A stretch of 64,000 nucleotides of DNA from Hemiscyllium ocellatum (Eukaryota). Position 1 is the stretch's first letter. Each line of letters opens with the position of its first letter. The stretch covers positions 36,357,090 through 36,421,089 of the forward strand of contig NC_083435.1 of the NCBI RefSeq assembly GCF_020745735.1, written 5' to 3'. Below, one piece after another: positions 4,029 to 49,274 of the stretch. The notes beneath the pieces were generated by a model. It ran no database searches. It was not told the DNA's origin and worked only from the letters and a program-made list of their open reading frames with translations. The position numbers and the translations under genes are program-made.

Positions 4029-4031
4029 TCA

Positions 4032-22194: not shown

Positions 22195-22470
22195 GAGTTC
22201 ACATTTTTCAACAGATAACTATTGCTGAGGTCAGTGTTGATGGCAGCATTAAGACATCGATGAGATTTGGATTTGATGGAGAAGACTTGATCAGTTTAGA
22301 CCCAGACAGAATGAGATGGATCGCATCCAATCCCATTGCAGTGATGACTAAGGAGAAATGGGATTCTGATGATTCCTGGAATAATTACTGGAAACAACAC
22401 CTGGAAGGTGCACATGTTGAAAATTTGAACAGATATCTGGAAGCTGGAAAGGATTATTTCAGAAGGAAAG
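22195..22470 (+). CDS. Class I gene 1 alpha2 exon (no cysteines)
   Basis: CTGACAG| (G)VHIFQQITIAEV...MRFGFDGEDLISLD...TKEKW...HLEGAHVENLNRYLEAGKDYFRRK |GTACGT. 276 nt, open frame. Confidence 0.93.
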
Positions 22471-22586
22471 GTACGTATTTCAGTTTTGTTCCATGTTCTG
22501 ATCTAACCTCACTGATCTATGAAACTGTTCTCCCATTCCATTCAGTGTCTGTCTGTTGTTTGTGTTTTCACCCTTGCCCATCACAG

Positions 22587-22665
22587 TTCAGCCTGAAGTG
22601 TTCATCTCCAGGAGGGAGCCCAATGGTCAGGACAAGCCGCTCACTCTCTCCTGCCTGGTCACTGG
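22587..22665 (+). pseudogene. Class I gene 1 alpha3 exon, truncated after 79 nt
   Basis: [27 protein letters not shown] is identical to 48982-49060. It then runs directly into a degenerate (TG)n tract (~22669-22746), with no WLRNG, no second Cys and no donor. Confidence 0.92.
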
Positions 22666-24650: not shown

Positions 24651-24770
24651 AAAATCTGAAAAGCAATTGGCTGCATTCCCATCTTGGAAGTCTCATTGCA
24701 TCAATGGTCATTCTATTGGCTGTTATTGTCGGGATAGTCGGAATAATCATCTGGAAAAGGTCACGGAGAG
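24651..24770 (+). CDS. Class I gene 1 connecting peptide/transmembrane exon
   Basis: GTTTCAG| (E)NLKSNWLHSHLGSLIASMVILLAVIVGIVGIIIWKRSRR(G) |GTAAGA. 120 nt. Confidence 0.9.
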
Positions 24771-25570: not shown

Positions 25571-25686
25571 ACACGAGTCCAATACCAACACCCCCCTCAA
25601 TCTCCCTCCCCTCACACTTGTTGTGTTCACAGTCTCTGAGAATAGATTACTCCCCATCCTAATGGACATTTATTTTGTTTCTGCAG

Positions 25687-25719: not shown

Positions 25720-25747
25720 GTAAGTGACTGAGGGGACAGAGTGTTGG

Positions 25748-26512: not shown

Positions 26513-27310
26513 CCCTCCTGACACTGTCCCACCCTCCCAGACACTGTTAAACCCTGTCAGACTAATTCCCCTCCCCTCCTGACCCTGTCCCACCCCCAGT
26601 CACTGTTAAACCCGACAGACTAATTCCTCTCCCCTCCTGACCCTGTCCCATCCCCAGTCACTGTTAAACCCTGTCAGACTAATTCCCCTCCCCTCCTGAC
26701 CCTGTCCCACCCCCAGTCACTGTTAAACCCTGTCAGACTAATTCCCCTCCCCTCCTGACCCTGTCCCACCCTCCCAGACACTGTTAAACCCTGTCAGACT
26801 AATTCCCTTTCCCTCCTGACCCTGTCCCACTCCCAGTCACTGTTAAACCCTGTCAGACTGACTCCCCTCCCCTCCTGACCCTGTCCCACCCTCCCAGACA
26901 CTGTTAAACCCTGTCAGACTAATTCCCCTCCCCTCCTGACCCTGTCCCACCCTCCCAGTCACTGTCAAACCCTGTCAGACTCATTCCCCTCCCGTCCTGA
27001 CCCTGTCCCACCCTCCCAGACACTGTTTAACCCTGTCAGACTAATCCCCCTCCCCTCCTGACCCTGTCCCACCCTCCCAGACACTGTTAAACCCTGTCAG
27101 ACTAATTCCCCTCCCCTCCTGACCCTGTCCCACCCTCCCAGTCACTGTTAAACCCTGTCAGACTAATTTCCCTCCCCTCCTGACCCTGTCCCACCCTCCC
27201 ATTCACTGTTAAACCCTGTCAGACTAATTCCCCTCCCCTCCTGACCCTGTCCCACCCTCCCAGACACTGTTAAACCCTGTCAGACTAATTCCCCTCCCCT
27301 CCTCACCCTG
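26513..27310. repeat. 61-bp minisatellite, ~13 units, downstream of the gene 1 stop
   Basis: Unit CTGACCCTGTCCCACCCTCCCAGACACTGTTAAACCCTGTCAGACTAATTCCCCTCCCCTC, with 60/61-bp variants. Confidence 0.95.
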
Positions 27311-28329: not shown

Positions 28330-30620
28330 TCACATCTGTACTAAAGGACATAGCTGCTAGACTGGGTCTGCAGCAGGTGGTGAGGGAACCAACCTGAGGG
28401 AAAAACATACTTGATTCCATCTTTCCAATCTGCCAGCTGCAGGTACAAATGTCCATGACAGTCTCAGTGAGAGGGACCATCACACTGTCCTTGTGGAGGC
28501 AAAGTCCCACTGTCACATTGGGAATAACCTCCATCATACGGAGTGGTACTATCACTGTGTTAAATGGAACAGACTTGGATCAGATCTAGCAGCTCAAGCC
28601 TGGGTATCCATGAGGCACTGTGGGCCATCAACAGCAGTAGAACCGTACTCCAGCACAATCTGTAACCTCATGGCCTGGCATAGCCCCCACTGAACCATTA
28701 ACACCAAGCCAGGGGATCAACCCTGGTTCAATGGGGAGTGCAGGAGGGCATGCCAGGAGCAGCACCAGGCGTACCTGAAGATGAGGTGCCAACCTGGTGA
28801 AGCCCCCAAACAGGACGACTTGCATGTCACATAACATAAGCAGCAAGTGATAGACAGAGCTTAGCGATCCCACAACCAACGGATCCGATCTAAGCTCTGC
28901 AGTCCTGCCACATCCAGCCAGCTCACTGGAGGCTCCACAAGTATTCCCACTCTCACTGATGGAACAGCCGATTACTCCAGTGTGAAAGATAGGCCTGAAG
29001 GTTTCACAGCAATCTTCAGTCAGAAGTGTCGAGTGAATGATTCATCTCAGCCTCCTCCAGTGGTCCCCAGCATTACAGATACCAGTCTTCAGCCAATTCA
29101 ATTCACTCCACGTGATATCAAGGAACAGTTGAAGACACTGGGTACTGCAAAGGCTTCAGGCCCTGACAACATTCAGGCAATAGTACTGAAGGGTTGTGCT
29201 CTAGAACTTGCCACTCCCTGATCCAAACTGTTCCAGTCCAGTTACAACACTGGCATCTACCCAACAATGTAGAAAATTGCCCAGGTATAATCTACCCTCG
29301 ATCATCAGTAAAGGGATGGAAGGGGTCATTAACACTGCTATCAAGCAGCACCTACTCAGCAATAACCTGCTCAGTGACGTCCAGTTTGGGTTCTGTCAGA
29401 GTCACTCAGATCCTGACCTCAATACAGCCTTGGTTCAAACACGGACAAAAGAGCTGAATTCCATAGGGGAGGTGGGAGGGACAGCCCCTGACATCGAGGC
29501 TGAATTCGACAGAGTGAGGCATCATGGAACTCGAGCAGAACTGGAATCAATGGGTACTGGGGGAAACCTCTCCAGTGGATAGAGTCATACCTGACACACA
29601 GGAAGGTGGTCTTGGTTGTTGGAGGTCAGTCATCTCAGCTCTAGGAAAGCTCTGCAGGAGTCCCTCAGTGTGGGGTCCTAGGCCCAACCATCTTCAGCTG
29701 CTTTATCAATGACCTTCCCTTCATCATAAGGTCAGAAATGGGGATGTTTGCCAGTGATTGCACAATATTCACTATTTGCGACTCCTCAGACACTGAAGCA
29801 GTCCATGTTCAAATGCAACAAAATCTGGACAATACCCAGGCTTGGGCTGACAAGTGGCAACTAACATTTGTGCCACACAAATGCCAAGTTATGACCATCA
29901 CCAACAAGAGACAATCTCACCACCACCCCTTGGCATTCAATGGTGTTACCATCACTGAATCCCCCCACTGTCAACAGCCTGTGAGTTATCATTGATCAGA
30001 AACTCAGTTGGATTCACCACATAAATGCAGTGTCTACAAGAGCAGGTCAGAGGCTAGAGATACTGCAGCAAGTAACTCGTCTCCTGATTTCCCAATGCCT
30101 GTCCACAAACAACAAGACACAGGTCAGGAATGTGATGGAATACTCCCTGCTTGCCTGGATGTGTACAGCCATCTCAACACTGAAGAAGCTTGACACCATC
30201 CAGGACCTAGCAACCCAACTGATTGGCACTGCATCCACCAACATCCAGTCCCTCCATCACTGACACTCAGTTACAGCAGTGTTTGCTATCTACAGAAATT
30301 CATCAAAGATCCTTAAACAGTGCCTTCCAAACCCACAACCACCTCCATCTGGAAGGTCAAGGTCAGCAGATATATGGGAACACCACCACCTTCATGTTCT
30401 CCTCCAAGCCACTCACCATCCTGACTCGGAAATATATCACCATTCCTTCACTGTCGCTGGTCAAAATCCTGGATTTCCCTCCCTCATGGCATTGTGGGTC
30501 AACCCACAGGAGGTAGACTGCAGCAGTTCAGGAAGGCAGATCACCACCACCTTCTCAAGGGCAACTAGGGACGGGTAATAAATGCTGGCCAGTCAGAGAC
30601 ACCCACATCCCACAAAAACT
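28330..30620 (+). mobile_element. Degenerate CR1/L2-group LINE (endonuclease end, RT, 3' UTR)
   Basis: Remnants: QVVREPT.GKNILD, FTPRDIKEQLKTL..AKASGPDNI, LLSDVQFGF, GMFASD, WADKWQLTF. The 3' UTR matches 4032-4670. Confidence 0.8.
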
Positions 30621-33600
30621 GAATCAATACAAAAACTGGGGGAGGGGTGATACATGGTTATTGTCTCTGGAGCAGGAACCCAGTGACCAAAGTATCATTC
30701 CAGAATGAGAAACCACTTTCTCCTCCAGGGAGTTGTTCAATTTTCACACCTGGATGTGACAGGACAGCAGAGCTTCGATCTTATCTATCGGTTGTGGAAT
30801 CACTAAGTTCTGACTCTGCTCCCTCTGCTGTTTACTGCATGATCAGTCCTGATCTGTCACTTCACTGACCAACACCATCACTTACAAGTTCCCCTCCAAG
30901 CCACTCACCATCCTGACTTGGAAATATATTGCACTTCCTTCACTGTCACTGGGTCAAAATCCTGGAATTCCCTCCCTAATGACATTGTGGGTGTCCCACC
31001 ACCACATGAACTGCTGCTGTTCAGGAAGGTACCTCACCCCACATTCTCAAGGACAGTCAGGGATGGGAAATAAATTCCAGCAGCCAGTGATTTCCACGTC
31101 TCTCCACTGAATAAAAAAGACATCATTTTTCATCTCTGCCTGCTCCTGCTCCTGTGATCCCTCCCACATTCCTCATTGAACTGGTATTGGTCCCCTGGCT
31201 TGTTGGTAATGAGAGACTGGGGGTTGGGTTGAGCCATGAGGTGACAGTTTGAATTGCATGGCAGTTCTGCTGGTGTTGATGACCCACAGGACCTCATGGA
31301 CACACAATCTTCATAGTTTGGGAGAAGATTTGTAGCTCGGGTGCTTGTTGTTGTGGTTCTGTTCGCCGAGCTGGGAGTATGTGTCGCAAACGTTTCGTCC
31401 CCTTTCTAGGAGACATCCTCAGTGCTTGGGAGCCTCCTGTGACAACCGGAAGCGGCAGAGACAAGCCACTATAAATGCTGAAGGAAACATGACAGAAGCG
31501 CTTCACAGGAGGCTCCCAAGCACTGAGGAAGTCACCTAGAAAGGGGACGAAATGTTTGCAACACAAACTCCCAGCTCGTCAAACGGAACCACAACAACAG
31601 TCTTCATCTGCTCGACCTGTTCACATCCCTCAGGAGGGGAGTGGGATGGGGGTGTGCCATGAGGTTTAATGGGGAAATGTCTTCTCACAAGATGGTTATT
31701 GGTAGGAGCAGGGTGCAGTGAACGGGCTGTATCCACCCCCCACCCCCCGCCCACACTGGGCTGTCTGCACCTGACTTTCACCATCAAACCCCCCCCACCT
31801 CTCCCCACACACACACACTGGGTTCTCTGTACCTGACTCTCACCATCAATCCCCCCCTCCCCAACCAATCTCAGATTTCCCGTTTCCAGACTGTTTAATG
31901 TTTTATAAATCCCAGCAGGTGCTTCCTTTCCTGGTAGAATAGCCCAATTCTCTTTGCCACATGACCCAGAACCTTGACCCTGGGGGGGTTAGCCTGGGTA
32001 TTTCTCTCTCTGCACTCCCCACTTCCACACTCCCCCCTCCCCCAGGGTCGGAGTGTCTCCCCTGTGACTGTGTCCTGAATTAGACTCAGTACCAGGAAGA
32101 ACACCAGGGTCCATGGGATTACCAGCCAGCCCAGGGTTAGCAGTGACTGATACTGACCTGTGACCCATGACCCAGGGTGACACCATGCCTCAGTGCTTAG
32201 CATTCCTGCCTCACAGCACCAGGGACCTGAGTTTGATTCCAGCCTTGGGTGACTGTCTGTGTGGAGTTTCCCTGAATCCGCATGGGGTTCCTCCGCGTGC
32301 TCCAGTTTTCTGCCACAGTCGAACAGGTGCACCTTGGGTAGATTGGTCATGTTCAGTTGCCCACAGTGTCCAGGGATGTGCATGTGGATTAGCTATGGAA
32401 CATGCAGGGTTACGGGATTGAATAGAGGGGAGGGTCTGGGTGGGATACTCTTGAGGGGGTCGGTATCGACTCAATGGGCTGAATGGCCTGTTTCCACACT
32501 GTAGGGATTCTATGATTCATGAATGGTCTTTAATCTCCCAGTTCCCAGAGAGAGAATGGAAAGCTGAATTCTGTACTCATCGGGAGGGACTCAGGGAAAA
32601 CACAGGGAGGGAAAGGAAAAGATCAGCAACATTCTGGGAATACACTGTCTCTATTCCAATCAGAGACTGGGAATTAAACACTCTGAGGGGAAACAGCTTC
32701 TGTTTACAAACAGGAAAAACCAGTACTACAACAATCTTTGGAGACTGCACCCTATTTGGTGAGAAATTTGATCCATTGTTTGATGTGGAGCTGCAGAAGC
32801 AGAAAAATGGAACAAATGCAAAGCGATGACCCGGTCCCAGTGACGGGGAAGCTCCAGCACAGCCAGGCTGAGGTTCAGGCTCTGAGACAGGAAGGCTGGG
32901 GCTGAGAAGAGGCCTCCTCTCCCCCACCAGCTCAGGAACATCAGGACAGCACTAGGACCCTGGGATCCCCCTCTCACAGTAAACATATGGCTCAGTCCTT
33001 CCAACTGGGGGAGGAGACGGTACATCGGGATTGTCCCTGGAGCAGGAATCCAGCAACCCAAGTGGAACCTCCTCCTCCTACATTGAGTTGTTGAATGACC
33101 ATGACTGGATGTGGTAGGACAGCAGATCTGATCTGTTGGTTGTGGAATCACTGAGCTCTGTCTCTGCTGCTCCTGTTATTTACTGCACACCTCGGCCTGT
33201 TCTGTAGCTTCAGCGAGGATCACCATCATCTGCAAGTTCCCTCAAAGCCACTCACCATCCTCACTATCCATTCCTTCACTGTCACTGGCTCCAAATCTTG
33301 GAATTCCCTCCCTCCCTAATGATATTGTGGGTCTGCCTCCGGCACATGGAATGTTCCATGAGGTTCACTGGGGAGATGGGTTCTCCCATGACTGCAGGGA
33401 ACCAGCTGAATCTCCATGCTGGATTCTCTGTACCAGACTCTCACCATCAACTCCCATACTGGATCCTCTGGAACTAAACGTCCCACACCACTCTCTGTCA
33501 TTAATCCACTCCATGAAGCCCCCACACCACACTCTTCGTTTCTCTCTCTGCACTCCCCTCCCTCCCCCAGGGTCGGAGTGTCTCCCCTGTGACTGTGCCC

Positions 33601-36600
33601 TGAATTAGACTCAGTACCCGGAAGAACACCAGGGTCCATGGGATTCCCAGCCAGCCCAGGGTTAGCAGTGACTGATACTGACCTGTGACCCATGAATGGC
33701 CTTAACTCTTCCAGGTCACATTGAACTGACCCTCAACAACTGCTGATACGAGGACCCACAAGCTGCTGAGTGAATGAATTCAACCTTTCTTGGGGAGTCA
33801 TGGAAAATGAACTCAGTCATCAACGGACAATTATTTATTGATGACCAACTACAATTATCAGGATTTATAGTCAGTTTAATGATATATACAGGAAAAGATT
33901 ATTTTCCCAAATGTATATTTGCTTTCTAAAAATTGTGAAAAATTCCGTATTGGATCCAATTTACATGACACATCCTTTCAGTGCAGTCTGCGGCTCTCTG
34001 AGCTGCCTCACTACATTTATAATTGTCGGTTATATTTTACAATATACACATCACGTTAATCAGACAGCTCACTCAAGGGGTTTTATAAGGCCATCAATCT
34101 CTTCCTGTACTGTGGTGGGAGGGCTGCAGACAAAGTCCTTGCCTCATTCAGCATCTGTGGGACTCTCAGTCCTGATTCGTTTTGTATGTGGTTTCCTTCT
34201 GTATCCTTGGAAGAGTTTCTGTGGAACACTGACTTCCACAATCTCCCAAAAAAACATTGGAACGTGAAACCCCTTTCCATGAAATGCCCCATTCTGCTTC
34301 TCACATATTATTGATGGGTGGGGTTAGGCTCTGAAAGGGTTAATGCTGAGGAGTACATGAAGCACTGCCCAATATGATGATGTCACATGGACTTGGGTGA
34401 AGGGATCAGATGTGGATGTTGAAGGGGTGAGACCCTACATGGATATCTCCCTCATCGTCTTTAAAACAATGTTCCCCCCACCCCCCACCCCCCACACCAG
34501 TGTATCCTGGACCGAGCTGTTACCATGAAGTAAACTCAGTCCTGTTTAAAACAAGAACCTGTTCTCATTAGCTTCTCATGTGGTTTTCCTCAACTAACCA
34601 CTTGACCAACTAGGTCCTGGAGATTCCAACCAGGAAAGAGGATGGTCATATTTAATCTCTCAGGTGGAACTGGAGGAGCTGTGGGGAGGATCCATCTTAC
34701 CTTACGTGTCTGAAAGGTCAATGGTTCATGATGTCAATCCCTTCAAACAGCCGTGTCAGTGCTCTTGAAGAGCTCGAGGTTAATGAGGTCTGGAACCACT
34801 CTGTGGTAGACTGGAATTTTACCTTCCTAACATCTCAATCGTTGCACAATGAAGGACCAACGCCATCCAGATAATGAACCATCACTGGATATCTTTATCT
34901 AACACTGTATCTATATCAGATTGTGTATGTCTCTGTCTGTCCATCAGTGTGTTGTGTGTGGGTACACACAGATGTCTCTGACTTTGTATCTATCCCTGTG
35001 TGTGTACATCTCTATACACTCCTGAGTGAACTGTGTATGAGTGCACACTGACATACCTAACGCTGATCTATATCTGTCCGTCTCCCTTTCGTTACCTGCC
35101 TTTTCTCTCTCACTCTGTGCAATCCATCTACTGACAGGGTCCTGCTCTCTGTCTGTGAAATATGGATCATGTATACAGACCACATTATGATCTGGAATCA
35201 CTTTCCCCTGAGCTACCTGACACTGCCAATGGAGACCAGGTGGTTAAACAAGATCCTGACACTAAAGTCCATCTAAAAGCTGAGCTACCAGCTATCGATG
35301 CTCTGACTATGAATCACGGTGACAATGTTCAGCTCATGTGGTTCCAGTGTCTGAGGATCCAATCCTGAAGATGGTCTTTTCTGGGTAATTTCAGAGTGAA
35401 CAGTAAAATTAAAATGTCTGTTTACAAGTGACTGACACAAAGCAACACAGACCTCTGTCATTGGGAACAAGTAGTTGAAGATGAGACAGATTAGATTACT
35501 TACAGTGTGGAAACAGGCCCTCCAGCCCAACAAGTCCGCACCGACCTGCCGAAGCATATACCACCCAGACCCATACTCCTACATTACCCCTTCACCTAAC
35601 ACTACGGGCAATTTAGCATGGCCAATTCACCTAACCTGCACATTTTTGGATTGTGGGAGGAAACCAGAGCACCCGGAGGAAACCCATGCAGACACGGGGA
35701 GAATGTGCAAACTCCACACAGAGAGTCGCCTGAGACAGGAATTGAACCCGGGTCTCTGGTGCTGTAAGGCAACAGTGCTAACCACTGTGCCACCATGCCG
35801 CCTATTCTGGCCTGGTGGATCTCGGATCCACTGTTCAATTTGTGGATGCACATTCCCAAGAAAAATCTATCTCAATCCTTTCAAAAAAAACAGTTATAGA
35901 GTCATGGAGATGTACAGCACAGAAACAGACAGTTAGGTCCAACACATCCATGCCGACCAGTTATCTCAAGTCATCCAGTCCCACTTGCCAGCACCCAGCC
36001 CATATCCCTCCAAATCCTTCCGTTTCATTTAACCTTCCAGATGCCTTTTAAATGCAATTGTACCAACCTCCACACTTTCTCCACCAGCTCATTCCATGCA
36101 CGTAACACACTCCATGTGAAAATGTTGCCCTTGAGGTCTCTTTTATGTCTTTCCCCTCTCATCCACAACCTATGCCCTCTAGTTCTGGACTCCTCTACTC
36201 AAAAATATTTTGTTTTATCCTATCCATGCCCCTCATGATTTTATCAACCCCTCAGGACACCCCTCAGCCTCTGACGCTCCAGGATTATCACCCCAGCCTA
36301 TTCAGCCTCTCCCTATAGCTCAAATCATCCAACCCTGGCAACATGCTTATAAATATTTCCTGAAGCCATTCAAGTTTCACAACATCTTTCTGAAAGGAAG
36401 GAGACCAGAATTGCATGCAATGTTGCTAAACTGGCCTAACCAATGTCTTGTACAGCCGTAACATGACCTCCCAACTCCTGGACTCTGACCAATAAAGGAA
36501 AGCATACCAAACGCCTTCTTTACTTTCCTATCTACCTGCAACTCTACTTTCAAGAAGCTATGAACCTGCACTCCAAGGTCTCTTTGTTCAGCAACACTCC

Positions 36601-39600
36601 CTAGGACCTTACCATTCAGGTATAAGTCCTGCTAAGATTTGCTTTCCCAAAATGCAGCACCTCGCATTTCTCTGAATTAAACTCCATCTGCTACTCCTCA
36701 GCCCTCTTTTTGTCGATTGTATGGAAAGCTCCCCATTACCCTTTCCTTTCACAGTTTATGGGGCCATCTGTCCAATGATCTGCCTGAAGAACATGACTTG
36801 GGTTTTTGTGATCTCACTGTTCACCAGGTTTAACACCAAGCACACCTTCTGAAGTTGATTGAATAATTCTGAGAGATACTCCAAATGATCCTTCCACATG
36901 TGTCTGAAAATGACAAGATCACCCAGTACCTGATGAAGGAGCGGCGCTCCGAAAGTGAGTGTGCTTTACACGCTGTCCAGCCAACTCGCCCACTCTATTT
37001 AATTTCTCCCTAATATTTATCACGTTGTCCAAATATTTCGTCTTTGAACTCTTGACTCTTCAATATTTCCTGAATTAATTTAAATGGTCCTCCCACCTCA
37101 TGTCCGAATATTAATTCAAATGGACTGAATTAAGCTGATTTATTAGGTACATCCCAAATTGCAAAAAAATGTACAAATAGAATTCTGTTCTCCCAGTTGT
37201 GATGACACTGTGGCATTAAGTGATGGATTTTACCCTGGTTTTTATTGAAGAGAGATTTTAAGGCAGAGGTACTGAGCAGTCCAGCTGAGCCGTGAGAGTA
37301 AACAGCTTGTGAGGCCTTGGGGGTTTTATAAGTTGGAATAATAGACACAGCCTGAATGACCCTGTGGGGTCAGGCTCCCACAGACCCAGGATGTTTTATA
37401 TACGTTTCAATAGTTGCTGTTTCGGTGTGAAGACGTGGAACCTCTTTATCCCTCTCTCAGTTCCAGCCAAAAGCTGGGGGTTCTCTTCCTGTTATTGGAG
37501 TTGGATGTGAGACAGTCTGTTCTCTAAATTTACATTTTGCCATGGGTGCATTTATGAGATATCACTCCATTGGAACAGTTAATTAGTAATAGTTATTGCT
37601 TTAATTATCCTATTATATTTTCCAGTAGAGTTGATATTTTGTTGTATTTTAATTACAGTGGATGAATAAAGTGTGTTCTGCTTTAAATCCGGTAGATGGA
37701 CCGATAAAACTGCATCTGGAATGCAGCATCTCATGCTGAGTTTTACAATAAGAAAAAGTTAGTATCTAGACGATCTTCTGAATATGTTGAGGGGGTTTGG
37801 TCGGGTTCTTAACACAATCCCCTGGATGGTCTTGACCGTCTGCCCCCAAGCATAGTTTTTAAATCTCAGTGTTCCCCAACAGGAAACCCTGGATAACTCA
37901 GGATATACAGAACCTGCTAAAAACCGGGTGTGAGGCCTTCACATCAGGAGACCCACTCAAATATAAGGAATCCAATTATGACCCTCACAGAGCCATGAAG
38001 ACAGCCAAGGACCAATACTGATCCAAACTAGAGACCCAGACAGACACCCGACAACTATGGCAAGGACTGAATGACATCACAGTGCAAGATAGCAGATGGT
38101 GACACATCCCTCCCAGATTGTCTCAACACCTTCTGTGCTCGCTTTCGGCAGAATTTCGGTGGAGAGGAAACACCCATTCCAACAAGTCCTGATGACCCTC
38201 TCCCAACAGTCATTGCATCAGAGGTCAGATCAGTTTTCCATTGTGTGAATCCAAGGAAAACGATGGGACCAGACGAAGTACCAGGCCGTGCACTCAGAGC
38301 AACTGACTGAGGTCTTCTCGGACATCTACAACCTCTCCCTGGAGTAGGCCACTGTCCCTGCCTGTTTCAAGAGGGCCAACATCATCCCTGTGCCTAAGAA
38401 CAGTCATGCTGCATGTGTCAATGACAACCGCCCAGTGGCCCTAACTTTGGTGGACATAAAGTGCTTTGAAAGGCTGGTCATGGCATTAATCAACTCCAGC
38501 CTTCCCACAATTCCTGACCCACTCCAATTTGCCTATCAGACCAACAGATCCACATCAGATGCCATATCACTTGCCCTTCACTCCTCCCAAGAACATCTTG
38601 ACACCAAGAACAGCTACGTAAGAATCCTACTCATTGACTACAGTTCAGGTTTCAACACTATCATCCTCTCGAGACTGATGACTAAACTTAGTGATCTCAG
38701 ACTGAGCCCCACTCTCTGCACCTGGATCCTCACTTTCCTGACCCACAGGCCACAATCAGTGAAGATTGGGAACAATATTTCATCCTCACTAACACTCAAC
38801 ACTGGAGTCTGTACTCAGTCCCCTACTGTATACCCATGACTGCGCCATCAAATACCAGGCTAATTCCATTTACAAGTCCACTGATGATACCACCATAGTC
38901 GGCCGAATCTCAGATGGCAATGAAACAGACTACAAATGGGAAAGTGAAGACCTGGAAAATGGTGCACTGAGAACAACCGATTGGTTGCTGGCAATTGCCC
39001 CGCCCCAGCACCACACGCACACACATTAACAGCACAGAGGTGGAACGAGTGGAGAGTGTCAAGCTCCTGGGAGTGACCATCAACAACAAATTTTCTTGGA
39101 CTCTTCGGGTGGACACACTGGTTACAAAGGCCCAACAATGTCTCTTCTTCCTCAGACAGCTGAGGAAATTCAGCATGATGTCCATCTTTTATAAGTGTAC
39201 TAATCAAGAGCATTCTGTCTGGATGTATCACTACCTGGAATGGCAACTGTACCATTCAAGATTGGAGATGGTTACAGAGAGTGGTGAACTCGGCCCGGAC
39301 AATCACAAAGGCCAATCTCCCATCTATAGAATCCATCTACCAGGCCCACTGTCAAGGAAAGGCCGCCAGCATTCTCAAAGATCCATCCCACCCTGGCAAT
39401 GTTTTTCTATAACCTCCTCTACAACCCTCTACCATCGGGGGGAAGGTAGAGAAGCCTGCACACAGGGACCAGCTGGTTACAAAACCGTTTCTACTCTATT
39501 GTTGTTAGAATACTGAATGGACTTACAAACTCTTAACATTCGTCTGTCCCTTTTTTTTCTGTTTTTGCCGCAGTTTACCTATTATTTACTTATCTATGCT

Positions 39601-42224
39601 ACTTAACTCTGTGATCTGCCTGTATTGCTCACAAGGCAAAGCTTTTCACTGTGCCTCGGTACACGGGACAATAAATTCAATTCAATTTAAAGTTTGATGT
39701 AATTGTTCTAATGCTCCCCCATTTCTGGATGGTACACAATTGATTTAAATTATTTAGATGTCTGAGCTCTTTCTAATTTCCTTGAATAACTTTGATGTAA
39801 AATTTGATCCTTGTTCCAATTGCATTTCTACGGGTTGTCTGTAACAATGGAAAAAATATTGAGTAATTCTTCTACACTCCTATCAGCCATGCTATCTCAT
39901 TCTGGAATGGCCTCTGGAAATCTCCGAGACACATCCATTATGGTCAACAAATACTGATCCCTACTTTTTGTTTTAGGGCTGGATCTGATGCAATAATTAA
40001 AACTTTTGTAAAAGGTTCATCAAATGCTGGAATAGGTATGAAAGGTGTTGGTTTTATTAATAAATGAGTTTTCCAATTCTCTGACATGTCTGGCAAAATG
40101 CAATGACATCTTTCTGCAGTCAAGGTCAAGAAAAGTAGACTTCTATTTTTGCTTGAGTTTTCCTTATTCCCAAATGACCTCCTGCTGGTAACTCTCATGG
40201 TGCTACCCACAACACCTCCTTTATATCACACACCAGTAATACAGCCTGATGAGCTCCTGCCCATTTTCACCCACTTGGTCTCCATTTCCTCATCAACACT
40301 TCGTTTTTAAGATAGTGACAATGTGGGATATGTGCACATTTGCCTTTTTGGTTCCACTGTTTTATCTTTCCACTTTTCAATTGTAACTTAGCGAACTTCT
40401 CTGAAGCAGAAAATGCCCACTTTGTTCTTCAACTGTACTTGCTTTTTCTCAACAACTTGAACAAATATAGTTTCCGATAATTGAATTTTAACTTGCTTAT
40501 CTTTTCTCTTTGATCTCTCCTTTTGTTCTACCTGTGGTTTTGTGACCTTGTTATCACACATTCAGGAAAGATTCCAGGATAAACTATTCTGGAACCGAGA
40601 ATTTCTGTTACTCCTCCCATCACTTTCCATCAGACCCTCTAACTTAGCCTTACAAGGAAGAACACTACGTTTCACACCATGAACTCCTCCAATCGAGCAA
40701 TACTCTTTCTAATTACACACCTCCTTATCTCTCCCTAACAAAGATTGATGTGCTTTCGTATCTCTGAAAATCTTAATTTTTTTTCCCACTCCTCTTGGTA
40801 AACATGAGGAAACTTTCCTCACACAAATGTTGCAAAGTTGAGGAGAATACTTGTGGATTGGAAGGCAGGAAGTTAGAATTTGGAGTTTGTAAAATGCTAG
40901 GGGTGGATGGGGGAATGCATTGCATGGTCCCTTTAAAAGATCGTGTGCTTTCTCTATGCTTAGAGATTTAAAATGTATGTCCATGAGCAGCAGCTTGAAA
41001 GTTTGCAAGTACACAGACAGCACCCAAACTGACACATTACATCGAAAGGCCATGCAGATAGCAGGCTAACCACCAGTTTTTTTTTCAATACAACAGGCTT
41101 TTGAATTTAGCCAATTAATTTGAGCAGTGACTTAGATACCAAAAATCTATAAGATTTAAGGCTGATGATTTTAACAACAGAGGACCAATCCTATTGTGTG
41201 AAATATTGATATGTCATTAAGGGGATAAAGGAAGGGGGCAGTTGGTTAAAGACCTCAGAGCTAACTGCCCTCCAGCAGAGCCAACAGCCCTCAGCTCTCA
41301 AGAGAGAATCACTGGCTCTCACAGCCTCATCTATGTCTTAGAGAAACCACCATCAAAATAGAAATGGTACAGCTAGTTAATATTCCTGACTGAAGAATTG
41401 TCGGAGCAGGCACAGAACATTCCAGAAGACACGTAACATGGCTGTAATTTTGAGAGACTAATTTTTTTTATGTATAAGTGGGGCTGTTCTTTATTGGAAC
41501 AACATACAATTAGAACCTTGCTGTAACTGGGAATAGTTAGAAGTTAATTGGGATTTATTCTGCTTGTTAATACTTTAGTTAATTTGTTCACTGTTAGAGT
41601 TAGGTAAATAGATGGTGACGAGTTGGTTTTAAAGTGAGTGTCAGAGATTTATTTTATTGAACCACTTGAAGTTGCTGAGAAGCAGGTTACACCACTCGGC
41701 ACACCCCCTTTTACAGAGTATGAGGTGAGGGGCTCCTCTTTGGGCATTTCGGTTTAGTTCACAGGGCGGGGGTCTCAACCTCCACTTTATAACACAAGGA
41801 AATTCTTCGCAGGTTTAACTCTCTGCTCTTCATCATGAGTTACCAATACTTCACAAAGGGAATTCTTGAACTCCAACAAAGTCGTCTCTCCAAGAGTGTG
41901 ATATGGGTCTGATTTATTTCCTTGACCTTATCCACTTTGCAATGTTACTTTGTTTGATTTTTTCAAACTTTGACCAAGTTCTTCCGTTAGATTTTGAAAC
42001 TGTTTTCTTTCAGCTTCTGGTACAAGTTCATAAGAACATGAGATGGCTGTTTTTAGAATCATAGATTCATAGACTCCCTACAGTGTGGGGACAGGCCATT
42101 TGGCCCAACAAGTCCACCCCGACCCACTGAAGGGTATCCCACAAAGACCCCACACCCCACACCCTGTGTCCTGCCAACGGGAGAAAGGTCAGTTTTCCCT
42201 GTGTCTGTTTCACAGCGAGTAACT

Positions 42225-42286
42225 CAACCTGTCTGTGTCTGATCTCCCTGGGAACTGGTGACAGAACCTGTTCATCTCTTTATTGG
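42225..42286 (+). promoter_or_regulatory. MHC SXY promoter module of class I gene 2
   Basis: CAACCT (42225-42230), CCTGGGAACTGGTGACAG (42247-42264), ATTGG (42282-42286); identical to gene 1. Confidence 0.65.
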
Positions 42287-42489
42287 GTTTTTTACTGAGA
42301 CTGGGACTGAGACTGGTTCGACAGCTTCAAGCTCAGGAAATGATCAAATTACTTTGTCGATCGGGAAATGGCATCATGGTAGAAACAAACTTTTATTTTG
42401 TTTATTTTTCAGTTTGTGAACAGCAGATATTTTCCAATCACTGTTTTATTCCCAGATCCTGATGGGAATAGGGAGAGTGGATTCCCAGA

Positions 42490-42541
42490 ATGTTGCTGAT
42501 CCTTCTCTCCATCTCCCTGTGTTTTTCCCGGGTCTCTCCTG
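42490..42541 (+). CDS. Class I gene 2 leader exon ([18 protein letters not shown])
   Basis: CCT G|ATAAGT: the expected phase-1 donor has AT instead of GT. Confidence 0.72.
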
Positions 42542-45500
42542 ATAAGTACAGAATTCAGCTTTCCATTCTCTCTCTCTCTCTCTCTCTCTGTGTCTGGGGT
42601 GAATGTGAGTCTCTTGGGGAGAGTTTGAAATGAGGGATGTTTGATCAGCCGCCTGTTATACAGCCAGCCTGATCTTTTACACATTGAAGGCAGCACAGTC
42701 TGGGAGACTCTGATGGGATTTGTGTCCAGGTCTCCTGACAGCAGGATGTAGAAACCCCGAGATCAGAGCAGCTCCGAGCAAATGGGAAATGGTTCCAATG
42801 GAGAATTTTAATTTTCACATCGATTGGGAGAAGCCAAACAGCTTCATCATTCCTGGTCTAAAGTCTTGTAACCACTGCGGGGAGGGGAAGGATACTCCAT
42901 GTCTAACCCAGCCCAGGCCCAGCTGTGATGCCCTCTTGGTTGAATAGGCCGGGTTATCTCAGACACCAACATCCTACTGGCCGTGTATAAAGGGCTGATT
43001 AAAAAGCTCAGTGAAGGACAGTGGGGATCCTGCTCTGAATTCTCCATCCCCCTGTTTGACAGAAAGACTGTTCACACAGTGACTGTCCCCCATGGTCTCA
43101 CACTTCATCCTCCCAAATATTCCTGTTTCTCTTCATTTCAGTCCGGATTCATTCACACCACATCTTTTCTGGTTTTGGCAATAAACCACAGAACTGCCCT
43201 TGGGTTGTCCTGAATTCCTCACTCCGGATGCTCCCTGGTCAGGAAGGTTTCCTCAATATCTTTCTTCAATGCATTCTAGGTTATTTGTCCAGGACAATGA
43301 TATACCGGTTGTGTCACAGGTCACTGTTGCAGGTTAGTGAAAGACCCAAGGTTTGTGATCGACTATGTCTGTGCAAGTTGCTATTAAAATTTAGAGATGG
43401 ATGCAATTGTGGTGGGTGTTGCTGGCTGGCTCGCAATTATTACTCATCCTGAGTTGGAGTTATATATCCATCCAATAAAGAAGCGACTCCTCAACCTATC
43501 GAGTCTGTACTGCCAGCAATACACTAAATCTACATTTGTCTGACTTCCAAGTGATCGGCCCGGAACCATGAATGTGCTCATCAAGGGCTCACCTAAATAA
43601 TTTTGATCTGTTGTGACTGTTCCCACCTCAACTCCCCTCCCAGGCTGTGCCAACTCTAGCCCAACTCCCTCTCAGTGAAAAATACTTTTCCTCAAATCCC
43701 TTTGAAACTTCCTGCCTCTCTCGTTAAAATTTTGCCCCCTTGCTATTGACCATTCCAAAGCGAACACATGCCCTTGTGAGGGTGCTGGCGAGCTGTGGGA
43801 TTTGGACACACACCCAGTGCTGCTAAACAGGGAGTTCCAGGATTATGAACCAGCAAATGTTATGGAATGGCAATATATTTCCAAATGATGGTGTGGGGCC
43901 TGGAGGGGAATTTCCAGGGGTTAGTGTACTTTTGCATCTGTTGCTGTTGTCCTCCTCGAAGGTAGATGGTAGATGTCACACTTCATCCTCCCTCTGCTGT
44001 CAGAGAAGTTGTGTTAAGTTTCTGCAGTGAATCTTGGAGATGGTACACACTGCTGTGCATTGGTTTAAATAAAGAATGAATGATGACATTGCTAGTTTTT
44101 GGGGAATGAAGAGGTGAATTACTTACTGCAGAATTCCTAAAATCTGACCTGCTCTTGCTTACAGTAACATGGTTAATCCACTTCAGTTTCTGAACAATTC
44201 AGTGATGGTAACACCATTGAATATTAAAGGGATGCATTGCATTCTCACCTATTTCAGTTGGTCAGTACATGAGACCTGTGTTTGGTTCCAATATAACTTG
44301 CTACTTACCAGCCAAAGCCTGAATATTATCCAGGTGTTGCTCCATTTGGAAATGGGCTGTTTCAATATTTGAGGAGTCGGAACAATGCTGAACGTTGTGC
44401 CATCATCGGCAAACATTCTTATTTCTGACATTATAATGGAGGGAAATTGCCTGAGAAGCTGCTGTCAAGATGTCCTGGAGCTGCGATACCTGACCTCCAA
44501 CAATTGCAACCATTTTCCCATGTGCCAACCAACAGAAAGCTGATTCCCATTGATTCCAGTTTTGCTGGGCTCCTTGATGCCACACTCGGTCAAATGTGAT
44601 ACTGATATCAAGGGCTGTCTCTCTCACCTCACTGCTGGAATCAGCTGTTTTCTCCATGTTTGAACCAAGGCTGTAATGTGGTCCTGGGGGAAGCTAAACC
44701 TGACGTCACTGAGCAGGTTATTGCTGTTTGATGTCACTGTTGGTGACACTATCCACCAGTTTATTGATGATCGAGAACAGGCTGTGGGGTGGTTAATTCA
44801 CTGGGTTGGATTTGTCCTGCTTTTTTGTGTACAGGTCATACCTGAGCAATTTTCCACATTGTCACGTTGAGGCTGGTGTTGGAGCTGTACTGGAGCATCT
44901 TGGTTAGGTGTGTAGGAATTTCGGGGGCATAAGTCTTCAATACTGTGTAAATGTTTATTAACCCCTTCTTTAACTGATATTTGCAGACACCCACTCACTG
45001 ACTGTGATCTACACGGCAGTCTCTGGCATTAAGGATTTTCCGGAGGTGACTAACATTGCGATAGTCAATGGAGTTCAACTCAATTACCATGACACTAATG
45101 TTCGTCGGATGGTCCCCAGACAGCAGTTCATGGTGGACTATTTTGATGCAGAATACTGGGAATATCTCACAGGTCTCGGGAATACACGATCAGACATGGC
45201 AAAGGAGAATCTGAATACAATGATGCAAAGTACAAACCGGACATCTGGTAAGGTCAGTGATATGGAATTTCATAGAATCTCTACAATGTGGAAGCAGGCC
45301 ACTTGAGTCCATATTGACTCTCCAAAGAACACCCCACCCACTCCATTCCTGTAACTCCACATTTTTCATGGCTAACCCACTGAGCCTGCACGTCCTGAGA
45401 CATTATGGGTAATTTAGCATGGTCAATCCACTAACCTGCATATCATTGGACTGTGGGAAGAAACTGGAGCACCCAGAGAATGCAGACACAGGGAGAATGT

Positions 45501-48500
45501 GTAAACTCCATATGGACAGTCACCTGAGGCGAGGATTGAACCTGGGTCCCTGATGCTGTGAGTCAACAGTGCTCACCACTGAGCTGCTGGGCTTCCATTT
45601 CTCCAATTCGGATTATTTTCTCACTCTGTCTGATCTCTCTCTCTGTGTAAGAAATAGGAACAGGAGCAGGCCATTCGAATTGTCCAACCTGCTCACTCAT
45701 TCAATAGGATCATGGCTGATCCGACATTCCTCACATTCACTTTGCTTTCTCCGCAAACTCACGATTCCCCGATCGATCCAAAATTCTCCGTCTCAGCCTT
45801 AAAATATGATTGGACTGGGGTGGACAAAGTTACGTGGCACCAGGCCACAGTTCAGCAGGTTTATCTAGAATCACAATTTGAATTTTTACCTGATGAGGGA
45901 GCAACGCTTCGAAAGCTTGTGATTTCAAATAAACCTGCTGGACCATAACCTGGTGTCATGTGACCTCTGACCTTAGCCTTAATCGCGCACAAGGATGTGT
46001 TCCCCACAGCTCTCTCTGGCAAGGACTATCAATCCTCCTCATCTCCTCCTCATCTCAGTTTTAAATGGGCACCCCTTTATTCTGAGTCTGTGCCCACTGA
46101 GCCTAGACTCTCCCATGAAGAAAAACATCCTCTCAGCATTTATCCTGTCCAGCCCCGTCAGAATTTGATATGTTTCAATGGGATCACCTCTCATCCTTCG
46201 AAACTCCAGTAAATAGACTCCCATACAAAGAACAAAGAAAATTTACAGCCCAGGAACAGGCCCATCGGCATTCTAAGCCTGATCCAAATGTACTGTCTAA
46301 ACCTGTCGGTCAATTCCTAAGCATCTGTATCCCTCTGCTCTCCAACTACTCATGCATCTGTCCAGACGGATCTTAACTGAATCTACTGTGCCTGCCTCTA
46401 TGCTGGCAATGCACTCCAAATACCCACCACTCTCTGTGTGATGTACTTGCCACGTGTACCCCCTTAAACTTTCCAGCTCTCAGTGTGACCTCTCGTTACT
46501 GAATCCTTCTCCCTGGGAAAAAGCTTGTCTCTATCCACCCTGTTTATATCCTTTATAATTTTATAAACCTCAACCAGGTCCCCCCTCAATCTCCTTTTTT
46601 CTAATGAAAATAAACCTAACCTACTCAGCCTTTCTTCATAGCTAGCACCTTCCATACCAGGCAACCCTCTGCACCCTCTCCAAAGTGTCCACATCCTTTT
46701 GGTAATGTGGCGACCAGAACTGTACACAGTATTCTAAATGTGGCTGAACCAATGTCGTGTACAATTTTAACATGACCTGCCAGCTCTTATACTCAATACC
46801 CCATCCAATGAAGGCAAGCCTTCTTGACTACTCTATCCACCTGTGCAGCAACCTTCAGGGTACAATGGACCTGCACTCCCAGATCTCTCTGCCCATCAAC
46901 TTTTCCCAAGGCTTTTCCATTCATTGTATAATTCACTCTAGAATTAGTCTTGTCTAAATGCATCACCTCATATTGTCTGGATTGAAATCCATCTGCCACT
47001 TTTCCGCCCAACTCTCCAGTCTATCTATATCCTCCTGTATTCTCTGACAGTCCCTTATGCTTTCTGCTACTCCACCAATCTTTGTGTCATCTACAAACTT
47101 GCTGATCATTCCAACAGTGCTCTCTTCCAGATCATTTATGTAGATTACAAACAATAGTGGCCCCAACACTGACCCCTGTGAAACACCACCGGTCACCTTT
47201 CTCCACCTTTCGAGAAACTCCCTTCAACTGCTACTCTCTGTCTGCTGTTGCTCAACCAGTTTCTTAACCACCTAGCTAGAACACCCTGCACACCATGTGA
47301 CTTCACTTTCTCCATCAGTCTCCCATGGGGAACCTTATCAAATGCCTTTCTAAAGTCCATGTATATGACATCAACAGCCCTTCCTTCATCTCTCAACTTG
47401 GTCAGTATTGTTTAGCCTTTGCTCATATGACAATCCCTCCACACCAGGGATCCTCCTAGTGAATCTTCTCTGAACTGCCTGGAATGAAATATTATTTTTC
47501 CTTAAATAAGAGAATAAAACTGCTCTCAGTACTGCAGATGTGGTCTCACCAGCATCTTATATTAATTAATATAATAATTAATACCATTATATTAAGACTT
47601 CCCTACACTTATACTCTAACCCCTTGAAACAAGGGACAACAGTTCATGCCCCTTCCTGGTTACCTGCTGCCCTTGTGTGCTAGCTTTCTGTGTTTCCTGT
47701 ATAAATTCCTTTTTATTTCAGCTTTTCTCCAGTTTCAATGAGACTCTGTTCTCCCTGTCTCCTTCTGAGCTTCCTACTCCATTCCCCAGGGTTCAGGGTC
47801 ACTCACTGAAGGGTAGTGTTGTCTATGGTGCAGATGGTGTCCCTCTGGGTTCTGCATCAGAAGGTTGTAGGTACAAAGCCCCACTCCAGGGCATAAACCC
47901 AGCAATTACACTGAACATGCCAGTTCAGGCTTTACAGAATGCTGTGCTGTTGAAGTTGCTGTCTGTCAGATGAGATGCTGAACAGACTCTCCGTTGGCTT
48001 TATGTAGATGAAGAGCAGGGAAGTTATCCCCAACACCCTGGTCAGTATCAAACTTCAGTTTTCATCATTTGGAAGTTTGTAGGAGCCTTCCTGTGTGCAA
48101 ATTGTCTCCCACATTGCCTCCTTTTAAAACAATTACTAAAGGTAATGAATTACATCACACTTCAGCATTCCTAGAGATCAAGAAACTTGCTTTTTAAAAA
48201 CAAGTCTAATTTTATTCTTTTTCTTTCCAATGAGTGACAGGCAGTGCCCTGGCCTGAGTTATACTGTTCCCTGTAACATTTCAGCATTCCTTATGGAGTA
48301 CAATTTGAACAGGAGATTTGCAGAGTGTTACTCTATTTCTTTTCCCTATTCTGACTGAGGTATTTATAAAGTTGCGTCACACTAATGAAGATCAAGAGAT
48401 GGTTCATGATTGAGTGAGTGATCTACTCAGTCCATCCCCCACCACTAACCTCTGGGTCACTCCACTCAGTCCATCCCCAGCACTGATCCCTGATTCTACC

Positions 48501-49274
48501 TGACGCTAGATTGTGTTTCCCCTCTGATCAGAGTGATTGTCATTTTATGCAAAAAATTAAATACTATTTCCTGTTTGATCACCGATAGGAATTCATGTGT
48601 TTCAATGGATAGCAATTGCCGAGATCACTGATGACGGCTCTATTAAGAGATCGATGCGAGTTGGATTTGATGGAGAGGATTACCTCAGCTTAGAAGCAGA
48701 TAGAATGAGATGGATTGCAACCAATCACAATGCAGTAAAGACCAAAGAGAAATGGAATGCTGATGAATCCTGGAACAAATATTGGGAAACACATCTCAAG
48801 CAAGGATTTGTTCAAAATTTAAAGAGATATTTGCAAGCTGGAAAGCAGTATTTTGGAAGGAAAGGTATATATTTCAGTTTTGATCCCATGTTCTGATCTA
48901 ACCTCACTGATCTATGAAACCGTTCTCCCATTCCATTCAGTGTCTGTCTATTGTTTGTGTTTTCACCCTTTCCCATCACAGTTCAGCCTGAAGTGTTCAT
49001 CTCCAGGAGGGAGCCCAATGGTCAGGACAAGCCGCTCACTCTCTCCTGCCTGGTCACTGGGTTTTATCCTGCAGACATCGAGGTGACCTGGCTAAGGAAT
49101 GGAGAGGTCATGTCTGAGACCCAATCCTCAGGGGTTCGACCGAACCACGATGGGACCCATCAAATCCAGAAAGAGATTGAGATCAATGCTGGGGATGAGG
49201 ATCAATACTCCTGTCAAATTGAACACAGCAGCCTGGCAGAGGGCAAGCTCTATCAGTGGGGTAAGGGACTGGAG

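What the first reader, a model, noticed from the sequence alone, without database searches (positions are those of the whole stretch)
22195..48864. Both class I paralogs lack the alpha2 disulfide and the N-terminal peptide anchors but keep the C-terminal TKxKW motif
Seen (HLA numbering by manual alignment): C101 is A in both genes; C164 is H or F; G100 is I; Y7 is Q or V; Y159 is H; W167 is N; Y59 is F in gene 1. T143, K146, W147 and Y171 are kept in both, and R84 is kept in gene 1. Known: these residues fix the peptide termini in classical class I, and the C101-C164 bond is nearly universal. Sharks have multigene non-classical lineages (e.g. UEA, UCA) with altered anchors. Inference: the groove still grips a carboxylate at the F pocket but has a remodelled A pocket, suiting N-extended or N-modified peptides, lipopeptides or fatty-acid-like ligands.
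Basis: partly seen in the sequence, partly recalled or inferred. Interest (0 to 1): 0.7.

Follow-up and report, generated by a model that had tools for sequence, protein, structure and literature searches.

The report
Known shark UEA-type class I genes, both damaged
The two genes are ordinary members of a large, shark-only family of non-classical MHC class I genes (almost certainly the published UEA lineage) whose every member lacks the alpha2 disulfide, and both copies in this window carry defects, so the residue pattern is real but neither new nor special to them.

Summary
C101 is A in both genes, C164 is H/F, G100 is I, Y7 is Q/V, Y159 is H and W167 is N. Y59 is F in gene 1. T143, K146, W147 and Y171 are kept, and R84 only in gene 1.

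The pattern is a family signature, not a trait of these paralogs. In 87 distinct alpha1-alpha2 domains from 13 shark species, C101 and Y7 are never present. W147 is in 87, K146 in 80 and T143 in 68. All 35 outgroup class I sequences have both cysteines.

The family is shark-only, multicopy and forms a 100%-supported clade. That fits the published UEA lineage, but no named UEA sequence could be compared.

The window is epaulette shark (Hemiscyllium ocellatum). Gene 2 is RefSeq XP_060706694.1.

Both copies are damaged. Gene 1 has an extra G at the signal-exon donor, which shifts the frame, and has lost the 3' two thirds of its alpha3 exon. Gene 2's signal-exon donor is AT instead of GT, and its RefSeq protein starts from another exon without a signal peptide.

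The carboxylate-grip, lipopeptide idea stays plausible for the family (precedent: chicken YF1*7.1) but is untested. Other agents of this scan reached the same family-level verdict on neighbouring windows.

The parts
16517..16569 (+). Gene 1 signal-peptide exon ([17 protein letters not shown]). It has 53 nt before the GT donor instead of the 52 needed, through an extra G (CCCGG|GTAAGT).
   Evidence: Splicing to the alpha1 acceptor then reads GGA GAC TAA, a stop. Family proteins show 17 codons plus one base at this junction.
17762..18022 (+). Gene 1 alpha1 exon, open. Y7 is Q, Y59 is F, R84 is kept.
22195..22470 (+). Gene 1 alpha2 exon, open. C101 is A, C164 is H, G100 is I, Y159 is H, W167 is N. 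T143, K146, W147 and Y171 are kept.
22587..22665 (+). Gene 1 alpha3 exon remnant. The first 79 nt differ from gene 2 at only one base in the 78-nt coding part. A deletion of about 200 bp then joins them straight to a (GT)n microsatellite. The second Ig cysteine and the donor site are lost.
   Evidence: DNA alignment
24651..24770 (+). Gene 1 connecting-peptide/transmembrane exon (ENLKSNW...IIIWKRSRR), with AG and GT borders
42490..42541 (+). Gene 2 canonical signal-peptide exon. The donor reads G|ATAAGT instead of G|GTAAGT.
43269..43332 (+). Gene 2 alternative first coding exon ([21 protein letters not shown], no hydrophobic signal core), used by RefSeq XP_060706694.1
   Evidence: It matches P0256 at 100%.
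44987..45247 (+). Gene 2 alpha1 exon. Y7 is V, Y59 is kept, position 84 is S.
48589..48864 (+). Gene 2 alpha2 exon. C101 is A, C164 is F, G100 is I, Y159 is H, W167 is N. T143, K146, W147 and Y171 are kept.
48982..49260 (+). Gene 2 alpha3 exon, an intact C1-set Ig domain with both cysteines
56566..56673 (+). Gene 2 connecting-peptide/transmembrane exon. The last coding piece, ...SDMSVPAPS plus stop, lies near 57611-57640.
4032..17292 (+). 13.3-kb block that is 97.6% identical to 29981-43267. It carries the upstream region and the signal exon of each gene. The alpha1 and alpha2 exons, by contrast, are deeply diverged (dS about 0.7).

Best explanation
The span holds two tandem members of a large, shark-restricted, multicopy family of non-classical MHC class I genes in the epaulette shark (Hemiscyllium ocellatum). 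This is almost certainly the UEA lineage of Almeida et al. 2021.

The family signature is no alpha2 disulfide (position 101 is V or A), no Tyr7, and variable 59, 84, 159, 164 and 167. W147, K146, T143, the N86 glycan site and a near-invariant alpha3 are conserved.

The two genes belong to different old subclades. Their signal-exon flanks and alpha3 regions have been homogenised to 97-99% identity, while alpha1 and alpha2 stay deeply diverged.

In this assembly neither copy encodes a normal heavy chain.
- Gene 1 is a pseudogene. It has a +1 frameshift at the signal-exon donor and has lost two thirds of the alpha3 exon.
- Gene 2 has a dead GT-to-AT donor on its signal exon. It is modelled by RefSeq from an alternative first exon without a signal peptide, so its product would probably not reach the ER lumen.

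For intact family members the most likely mode of action is inferred, not shown, at about 35-40%. They would be beta2-microglobulin-associated surface glycoproteins. Their groove would keep the F-pocket clamp for a C-terminal carboxylate or backbone. It would have an opened, more apolar N-terminal end for hydrophobic or N-modified ligands.
For: Identity and species:
- Gene 2 alpha1-alpha2 is 100% identical to P0256 = XP_060706694.1 of H. ocellatum, and its first and alpha1 exons match the window at 100%.

Family:
- An exhaustive HMMER search found close relatives (60-73% identity in alpha2). The six whose source could be looked up are all sharks. Everything else is at 41% or below.
- Two further searches returned 78 and 99 relatives, all from sharks of both superorders, none from rays or chimaeras.
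- The family forms a clade with 100% SH-aLRT support against 35 outgroups that include other cartilaginous-fish class I lineages.

Signature:
- C101 0/87, Y7 0/87, W147 87/87, K146 80/87, T143 68/87, N86 86/87. C101 and C164 are present in 35/35 outgroups.

Fold:
- The AlphaFold2 model of gene 2's ectodomain has pLDDT 91.7 and a canonical class I topology. The best PDB matches are chicken BF2 and YF1*7.1, shark UAA (6lup) and MR1.

Name:
- The literature gives two expanded shark class Ib families, UBA (derived from classical UAA) and the more ancient UEA. UEA sits in the class Ib cluster next to BRD2/B2M and class II (PMC12562908, PMC10751288).

Lesions.

Mosaic: a 13.3-kb block at 97.6% and the alpha3 start at 98.7%, against dS of 0.76 and 0.69 for alpha1 and alpha2.
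Against: - No sequence labelled UEA could be obtained. All database names are automatic ('F10 alpha chain-like'), and the two J Immunol papers are not held. The name therefore rests on distribution, copy number, divergence and elimination of the other lineages.
The GGG run could be an assembly slip, and the AT donor could be allelic.
- RefSeq does model gene 2 as protein-coding, so it may be transcribed.
- The mode of action of intact members is inference only.
Confidence: 0.8

Rival explanations
1. Both genes are working presenting molecules whose groove grips a ligand carboxylate at the F pocket. They would present N-extended or N-modified peptides, lipopeptides or fatty-acid-like ligands.
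For: - T143/K146/W147 are kept in both genes. R84 and T80 are also kept in gene 1, and in all 12 members of its orectolobiform clade that carry the full set.
- The groove has apolar replacements at 63, 66, 73, 74, 114 and 116, and smaller residues at 7, 99, 163 and 167.
- Chicken YF1*7.1 is a precedent and one of the better structural matches.
Against: - Gene 1 cannot make the protein, because of the frameshift at the signal junction and the alpha3 deletion.
- Gene 2 lacks a usable signal exon.
- The TKEKW motif lies in a block that is conserved as a whole.
- Position 84 is hypervariable, and groove hydrophobicity is only modestly raised.
- There are no ligand data.
Confidence: 0.12
2. Gene 1 is a working alpha3-less molecule (alpha1-alpha2-TM, like ULBP/RAE-1), made by skipping the alpha3 remnant.
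For: - Skipping alpha3 keeps the reading frame.
- RefSeq predicts alpha2-to-TM products in four other sharks: Cetorhinus P0004, S. torazame P0156, C. punctatum P0215 and C. plagiosum P0011.
- The alpha1, alpha2 and TM exons of gene 1 are open, with good splice sites.
Against: - The extra G at the signal-exon donor puts alpha1 out of frame, with a stop after two codons.
- No RefSeq protein corresponds to gene 1. The best match is 82%.
- The RNA word search is no better than the cross-species background. The share is 0.30 in one possible RNA run against 0.22-0.26 in DNA of another species.
Confidence: 0.05
3. Intact family members carry no ligand. They would act as surface tags read by NK-type or other receptors, as MIC or ULBP are. 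The conserved alpha2 block would then be kept for folding, chaperone docking or receptor contact, not for a carboxylate.
For: - The whole stretch from about position 125 to 153 is conserved, not only the groove-facing residues.
- The alpha3 domain is 77-100% identical across shark orders.
- The most variable positions (65, 69, 84, 164, 167, 180) lie on the helices, where a receptor would also bind.
- The loss of the disulfide that normally stabilises the peptide-receptive state fits a groove that need not open.
Against: - Variable positions include groove-lining ones (84, 164, 167).
- T143 and K146 are lost in other non-classical shark and skate lineages but kept here.
- The N86 glycan, used by the loading and quality-control pathway, is kept in 86/87.
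Confidence: 0.25

Closest known systems
Shark UEA non-classical class I lineage (Almeida et al. 2021, J Immunol 207:824; cited in PMC10751288 and PMC12562908)
   Same: - Found in sharks only, in many copies per genome.
- Lies on the MHC chromosome, in the class Ib cluster and away from the UBA array.
- Very divergent from classical UAA and lacks the invariant peptide-terminus residues.
- Falls into distinct subclades.
   Different: Nothing was shown to differ. The identity is by elimination, because no named UEA sequence could be compared. Whether the paper states the loss of the alpha2 disulfide could not be read.
Chicken YF1*7.1 (MHC-Y class I; PDB 3p73, 9eb2-9eb4; PMC12212280, PMC2998441)
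   Same: - It has a class I fold with beta2-microglobulin.
- It has an apolar A' pocket that takes an acyl chain.
- Residues equivalent to 84, 143, 146 and 147 contact the peptide part.
- It is among the better structural matches to the model (TM 0.69-0.70).
   Different: YF1*7.1 keeps Tyr7, a contact residue in PMC12212280. It is only 32% identical to gene 2, and its ligands are known. The resemblance is functional analogy only.
Classical class I (shark UAA, PDB 6lup; chicken BF2; HLA-A2)
   Same: - Same exon plan (signal, alpha1, alpha2, alpha3, TM) and same fold.
- N86 glycan site, T143, K146, W147 and Y171.
   Different: - No C101-C164 disulfide.
- Y7, Y159 and W167 are replaced.
- Multicopy.
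- About 31-35% identity.
Shark UFA/UGA (CD1-like) and other cartilaginous-fish class Ib lineages (e.g. P0295 Heterodontus, P0125 Leucoraja)
   Same: Non-classical and on the same chromosome. P0295 and P0125 have apolar grooves.
   Different: P0295 and P0125 keep C101 and C164, have lost T143 and K146, and score as more apolar (1.5-1.7 vs 0.73). UFA and UGA are reported as single or low copy and present in rays too. P0295 and P0125 fall outside the family clade.

Membership tests
MHC class I heavy chain (fold and gene plan) | alpha1/alpha2 platform (Pfam MHC_I) plus a C1-set alpha3, each on its own phase-1 exon | tested here: met
   Pfam matches; exon borders; AlphaFold2 model with pLDDT 91.7 and class I topology; Foldseek E about 1e-29 to class I structures. 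Gene 1 meets this only for alpha1 and alpha2.
Classical (peptide-presenting) class I | Invariant peptide-terminus residues Y7, Y59, Y/R84, T143, K146, W147, Y159, Y171 | tested here: not met
   Gene 1 reads QFRTKWHY and gene 2 VYSTKWHY, against YYRTKWYY in most outgroups.
Classical (peptide-presenting) class I | C101-C164 disulfide in alpha2 | tested here: not met
   A/H in gene 1 and A/F in gene 2. C101 is absent in 87/87 family domains and both cysteines are present in 35/35 outgroups.
Shark UEA lineage | Present in sharks, not in rays or chimaeras | tested here: met
   All 78 and 99 relatives come from 13 shark species, including Heptranchias and Pristiophorus. The nearest ray proteins are at 33% or below and fall outside the clade.
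Shark UEA lineage | Large multigene family within one genome | tested here: met
   There are 15 distinct alpha1-alpha2 domains from H. ocellatum, 14 from C. punctatum and 11 each from Mustelus and Cetorhinus. Two tandem copies lie in this window.
Shark UEA lineage | MHC-linked, in the class Ib cluster beside BRD2/B2M and class II, apart from the UBA cluster | tested here: inconclusive
   - All H. ocellatum members lie on one 49.3-Mb record, and all Carcharodon members on one 115.8-Mb record.
- The white-shark table of PMC10751288 shows about 16 class Ib genes 1.3-3.4 Mb from B2M.
- Unchecked scan notes place class II genes 2.2-2.8 Mb and the UBA array 9.8 Mb from this window.
- No coordinates could be matched directly.
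Shark UEA lineage | Clusters with the published UEA sequences in a tree | not testable with these tools
   No protein in the databases carries the name. PMC8454915 and PMC7002201 are not held.
Lipopeptide-presenting class I (YF1*7.1 type) | Apolar A' pocket able to take an acyl chain, plus F-pocket contacts through 84, 143, 146 and 147 | tested here: inconclusive
   The residues fit in part, more so in gene 1 (R84, T143, K146, W147; groove index 1.15) than in gene 2 (S84; 0.66). Pocket shape could not be measured, and no ligand is known.
Processed or decayed pseudogene (gene 1) | Lesions that prevent a full-length product | tested here: met
   Extra G at the signal-exon donor (53 nt instead of 52, stop after two codons) and a deletion of about 200 bp in alpha3. 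No matching RefSeq protein exists. The lesions were not confirmed in independent reads.

The most novel reading that the evidence does not exclude
Intact members of this disulfide-less shark family would be a second, independent origin of lipopeptide or N-acyl-amino-acid presentation. This applies above all to the orectolobiform subclade of gene 1, which keeps R84, T143, K146 and W147 beside an apolar groove. The ligand carboxylate or C-terminal backbone would be clamped at the F pocket and an acyl chain buried at the rebuilt A end, as in chicken YF1*7.1. Loss of the C101-C164 staple would let the alpha2 helix adapt to such ligands.
Probability: 0.15. Interest if true: 0.6.

Novelty: already known. 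Interest (0 to 1): 0.2.

Why it matters
It matters little for these two genes. They are damaged copies within a described family, and gene 2 is already in RefSeq.

The family-level picture is still useful to anyone who wants to find what UEA molecules bind.
- The disulfide loss is universal and old. It predates the split of the two shark superorders, since Heptranchias and Pristiophorus share it.
- The T143/K146/W147 clamp is kept in three quarters of members.
- Position 84 and the A-pocket end vary most.
- One orectolobiform subclade keeps the full C-terminal clamp.

The analysis also shows that ligand work should use intact paralogs (for example the genes of P0257 or P0198) and not gene 2 of this window.

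Tried and rejected
- Named lineage sequences. Three cluster look-ups and two homology searches returned only automatic names, so there is no direct UEA label.
- The UEA and UDA papers (PMC8454915, PMC7002201, DOI) are not held. The supplement of PMC10751288 labels genes only as 'MHC-Ib'.
- DNA of paralogs or orthologs, wanted to compare splice donors and test whether the alpha3 deletion is shared with Chiloscyllium. The look-up of encoding contigs gave no DNA for P0270, P0243, P0257 or P0011.
- RNA evidence. Those places were sent to no search tool afterwards.
- Word searches found no run on record as RNA. One possible RNA run holds 0.30 of gene 1's alpha2 words, against a cross-species background of 0.22-0.26. 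This is inconclusive.
- Groove hydrophobicity by Kyte-Doolittle mean over 29 positions shows only a modest shift and is too crude to decide.
- The AlphaFold2 model gives the fold but no pocket geometry through these tools.
- The idea that the two genes are a recent whole-gene duplicate was rejected. Only the flanks are 97-99% identical, and alpha1 and alpha2 have dS of about 0.7.
Full report
**What is there.**
The span runs from the alpha2 exon of one MHC class I-like gene to the alpha2 exon of the next, both on the + strand.

Translated searches and inspection of splice sites give the following.
- Gene 1: signal exon 16517-16569, alpha1 17762-18022, alpha2 22195-22470, an alpha3 remnant 22587-22665, and a TM exon 24651-24770.
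- Gene 2: signal exon 42490-42541, an alternative first exon 43269-43332, alpha1 44987-45247, alpha2 48589-48864, alpha3 48982-49260, a TM exon 56566-56673, and a last coding piece near 57611-57640.

Pfam recognises MHC_I in both alpha2 exons and in gene 2's alpha1. It recognises C1-set in gene 2's alpha3.

The rest of the window is LINE and other retroelement debris, plus two 61-bp satellite arrays.

**The observation.**
- phmmer aligns gene 2's alpha2 without gaps to solved class I chains. A falls on C101, I on G100, F on C164, H on Y159 and N on W167. TKEKW falls on TKRKW.
- In an alignment with 35 outgroup class I sequences, the columns used for positions 7, 59, 84, 143, 146, 147, 159 and 171 read YYRTKWYY in most outgroups. 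Gene 1 reads QFRTKWHY and gene 2 VYSTKWHY. Columns 101/164 read CC in all 35 outgroups, AH in gene 1 and AF in gene 2.

So the register is right.

**Whose pattern it is.**
An exhaustive HMMER search with gene 2's alpha2 found a handful of close relatives (60-73% identical). Those whose source could be looked up are sharks. Everything after them is at 41% or less.

Searches with one full-length relative returned 78 proteins (alpha1-alpha2) and 99 proteins (alpha3). All named ones come from 13 shark species: Hemiscyllium, two Chiloscyllium, Stegostoma, Rhincodon, Heterodontus, two Scyliorhinus, Mustelus, Carcharodon, Cetorhinus, Heptranchias and Pristiophorus. No ray or chimaera is among them.

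I extracted 85 distinct alpha1-alpha2 domains and added the two genes. The census is as follows.
- Position 101 is V78 A6 I2 L1, never C. Position 164 is C in only 7. Y7 is never present (V in 61).
- W147 is in 87/87, K146 in 80, K144 in 75, T143 in 68, Y171 in 62, and N86 in 86.
- Position 84 is S21 N18 R17 M13.
- The T143/K146/W147 triad is in 66 of 87. Adding R84 leaves 12, all in the orectolobiform clade that contains gene 1.

It is old, because both shark superorders share it.

**Which family.**
In a maximum-likelihood tree the 87 domains form one clade with 100% SH-aLRT support. The 35 outgroups include a classical-type manta sequence and two other cartilaginous-fish non-classical lineages that keep both cysteines. 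Gene 1 and gene 2 fall in different subclades.

The literature I could read describes the shark lineages as follows (PMC12562908, PMC10751288).
- There are two expanded class Ib families: UBA, derived from classical UAA, and the more ancient UEA.
- UDA, UFA and UGA are single or low copy.
- UEA lies with UDA and UFA in the class Ib cluster next to BRD2/B2M and class II. The UBA cluster lies elsewhere.

A shark-only, highly multicopy, very divergent family fits UEA and none of the others. From memory, not verified here, the 2021 abstract also describes UEA as shark-only, as lacking the invariant peptide-terminus residues, and as split into three sublineages.

No sequence carrying the name could be compared, so I put the name at about 85%. 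Other agents of this scan reached the same family-level verdict on neighbouring windows of this chromosome. That is not independent evidence.

**Species and annotation.**
Gene 2's alpha1-alpha2 is 100% identical to P0256 (XP_060706694.1, Hemiscyllium ocellatum). That protein's first and alpha1 exons also match the window at 100%. Gene 1 has no protein closer than 82%.

**Both copies are damaged (new here).**
- *Gene 1.* The family's signal exon carries 17 codons plus one base. Gene 1 has CCCGG|GTAAGT, which is 53 nt instead of 52, so the junction with alpha1 reads GGA GAC TAA. Its alpha3 exon matches gene 2's for 79 nt (one base differs in the coding part). A deletion of about 200 bp then runs straight into the (GT)n tract that lies just after the exon in gene 2. 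The second Ig cysteine and the donor are removed.
- *Gene 2.* The signal exon ends G|ATAAGT, so the donor G has become A. RefSeq accordingly starts the protein at another exon, [21 protein letters not shown], which has no hydrophobic signal core. Close paralogs (P0257, P0260) carry the normal signal peptide.

I could not confirm these lesions in reads. The word searches were inconclusive.

**Mosaic structure.**
A 13.3-kb block with the upstream region and signal exon is 97.6% identical between the genes. The start of alpha3 and the intron before it are about 97-99% identical. Yet alpha1 and alpha2 have dS of 0.76 and 0.69, with dN/dS of 0.45 and 0.31.

The groove-coding exons are therefore old and distinct, while the flanks have been homogenised. 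This matches the near-invariant alpha3 across the family.

**How it works.**
For these two copies, probably not at all (gene 1) or poorly (gene 2).

For intact members, an AlphaFold2 model of gene 2's ectodomain is confident (pLDDT 91.7) and has the canonical topology. The best structural matches are chicken BF2 and YF1*7.1, shark UAA and MR1.

Conservation mapping shows that the sheet and the first alpha2 helix (about 125-153) are conserved as a block. The most variable positions are 65, 69, 84, 164, 167 and 180. Groove positions are more apolar than in outgroups, but only modestly (0.73 vs 0.39; gene 1 is 1.15, gene 2 is 0.66).

Chicken YF1*7.1 shows that a class I groove can bury an N-acyl chain at the A end. 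It contacts the peptide part with the counterparts of R84, T143, K146 and W147 (PMC12212280).

Nothing here tests it, and a ligand-free, receptor-tag role is not excluded.

**Verdict.**
These are ordinary and, in this window, defective members of a known kind.

Noticed in passing
window 4032-17292 and 29981-43267: A 13.3-kb direct duplication at 97.6% identity carries each gene's upstream region and signal exon. It ends two bases before gene 2's alternative first exon. The alpha1 and alpha2 exons downstream are deeply diverged, so the flanks have been homogenised around old groove cassettes.
   Followed up: partly
window 26513-27310 and 57692-58743: Two arrays of a 61-bp C-rich satellite (13 and 18 copies, 86-93% matches), one downstream of each gene's TM exon. 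The second starts just after gene 2's stop codon.
   Followed up: partly
proteins P0004, P0156, P0215, P0011 (alpha2 joined to TM) and P0213, P0188, P0182 (alpha2 joined to ...[11 protein letters not shown]): RefSeq predicts in-frame isoforms in several sharks. Some skip the whole alpha3 exon. Others use an internal acceptor that removes its first 34 residues or so, including the first Ig cysteine. Whether these are real transcripts is unknown.
   Followed up: no
family subclade with P0005, P0154, P0158, P0159, P0160, P0241, P0162: One subclade looks like a conserved, roughly one-per-species ortholog group with short branches from Heptranchias to Chiloscyllium. The subclades of gene 1 and gene 2, in contrast, are expanded within orders.
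   Followed up: no
proteins P0295 (Heterodontus) and P0125 (Leucoraja): Two other cartilaginous-fish class I lineages keep C101 and C164 but have lost T143 and K146. They have the most apolar groove index of all sequences compared (1.5-1.7) and may be the CD1-like UFA/UGA type.
   Followed up: no
window 59979-62882 (+): An open 967-aa LINE ORF2 with endonuclease and reverse-transcriptase domains. Other LINE fragments lie at 138-962, 2886-4046, 12429-12878, 51242-51784 and 52777-53364.
   Followed up: partly
window 51511-51600 and 47130-47225: A repeat-derived piece ([24 protein letters not shown]...) is used as an extra exon between alpha3 and TM in long isoforms of a close paralog (P0243). 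It is present in gene 2's intron but is not part of its RefSeq protein.
   Followed up: no
   Followed up: no
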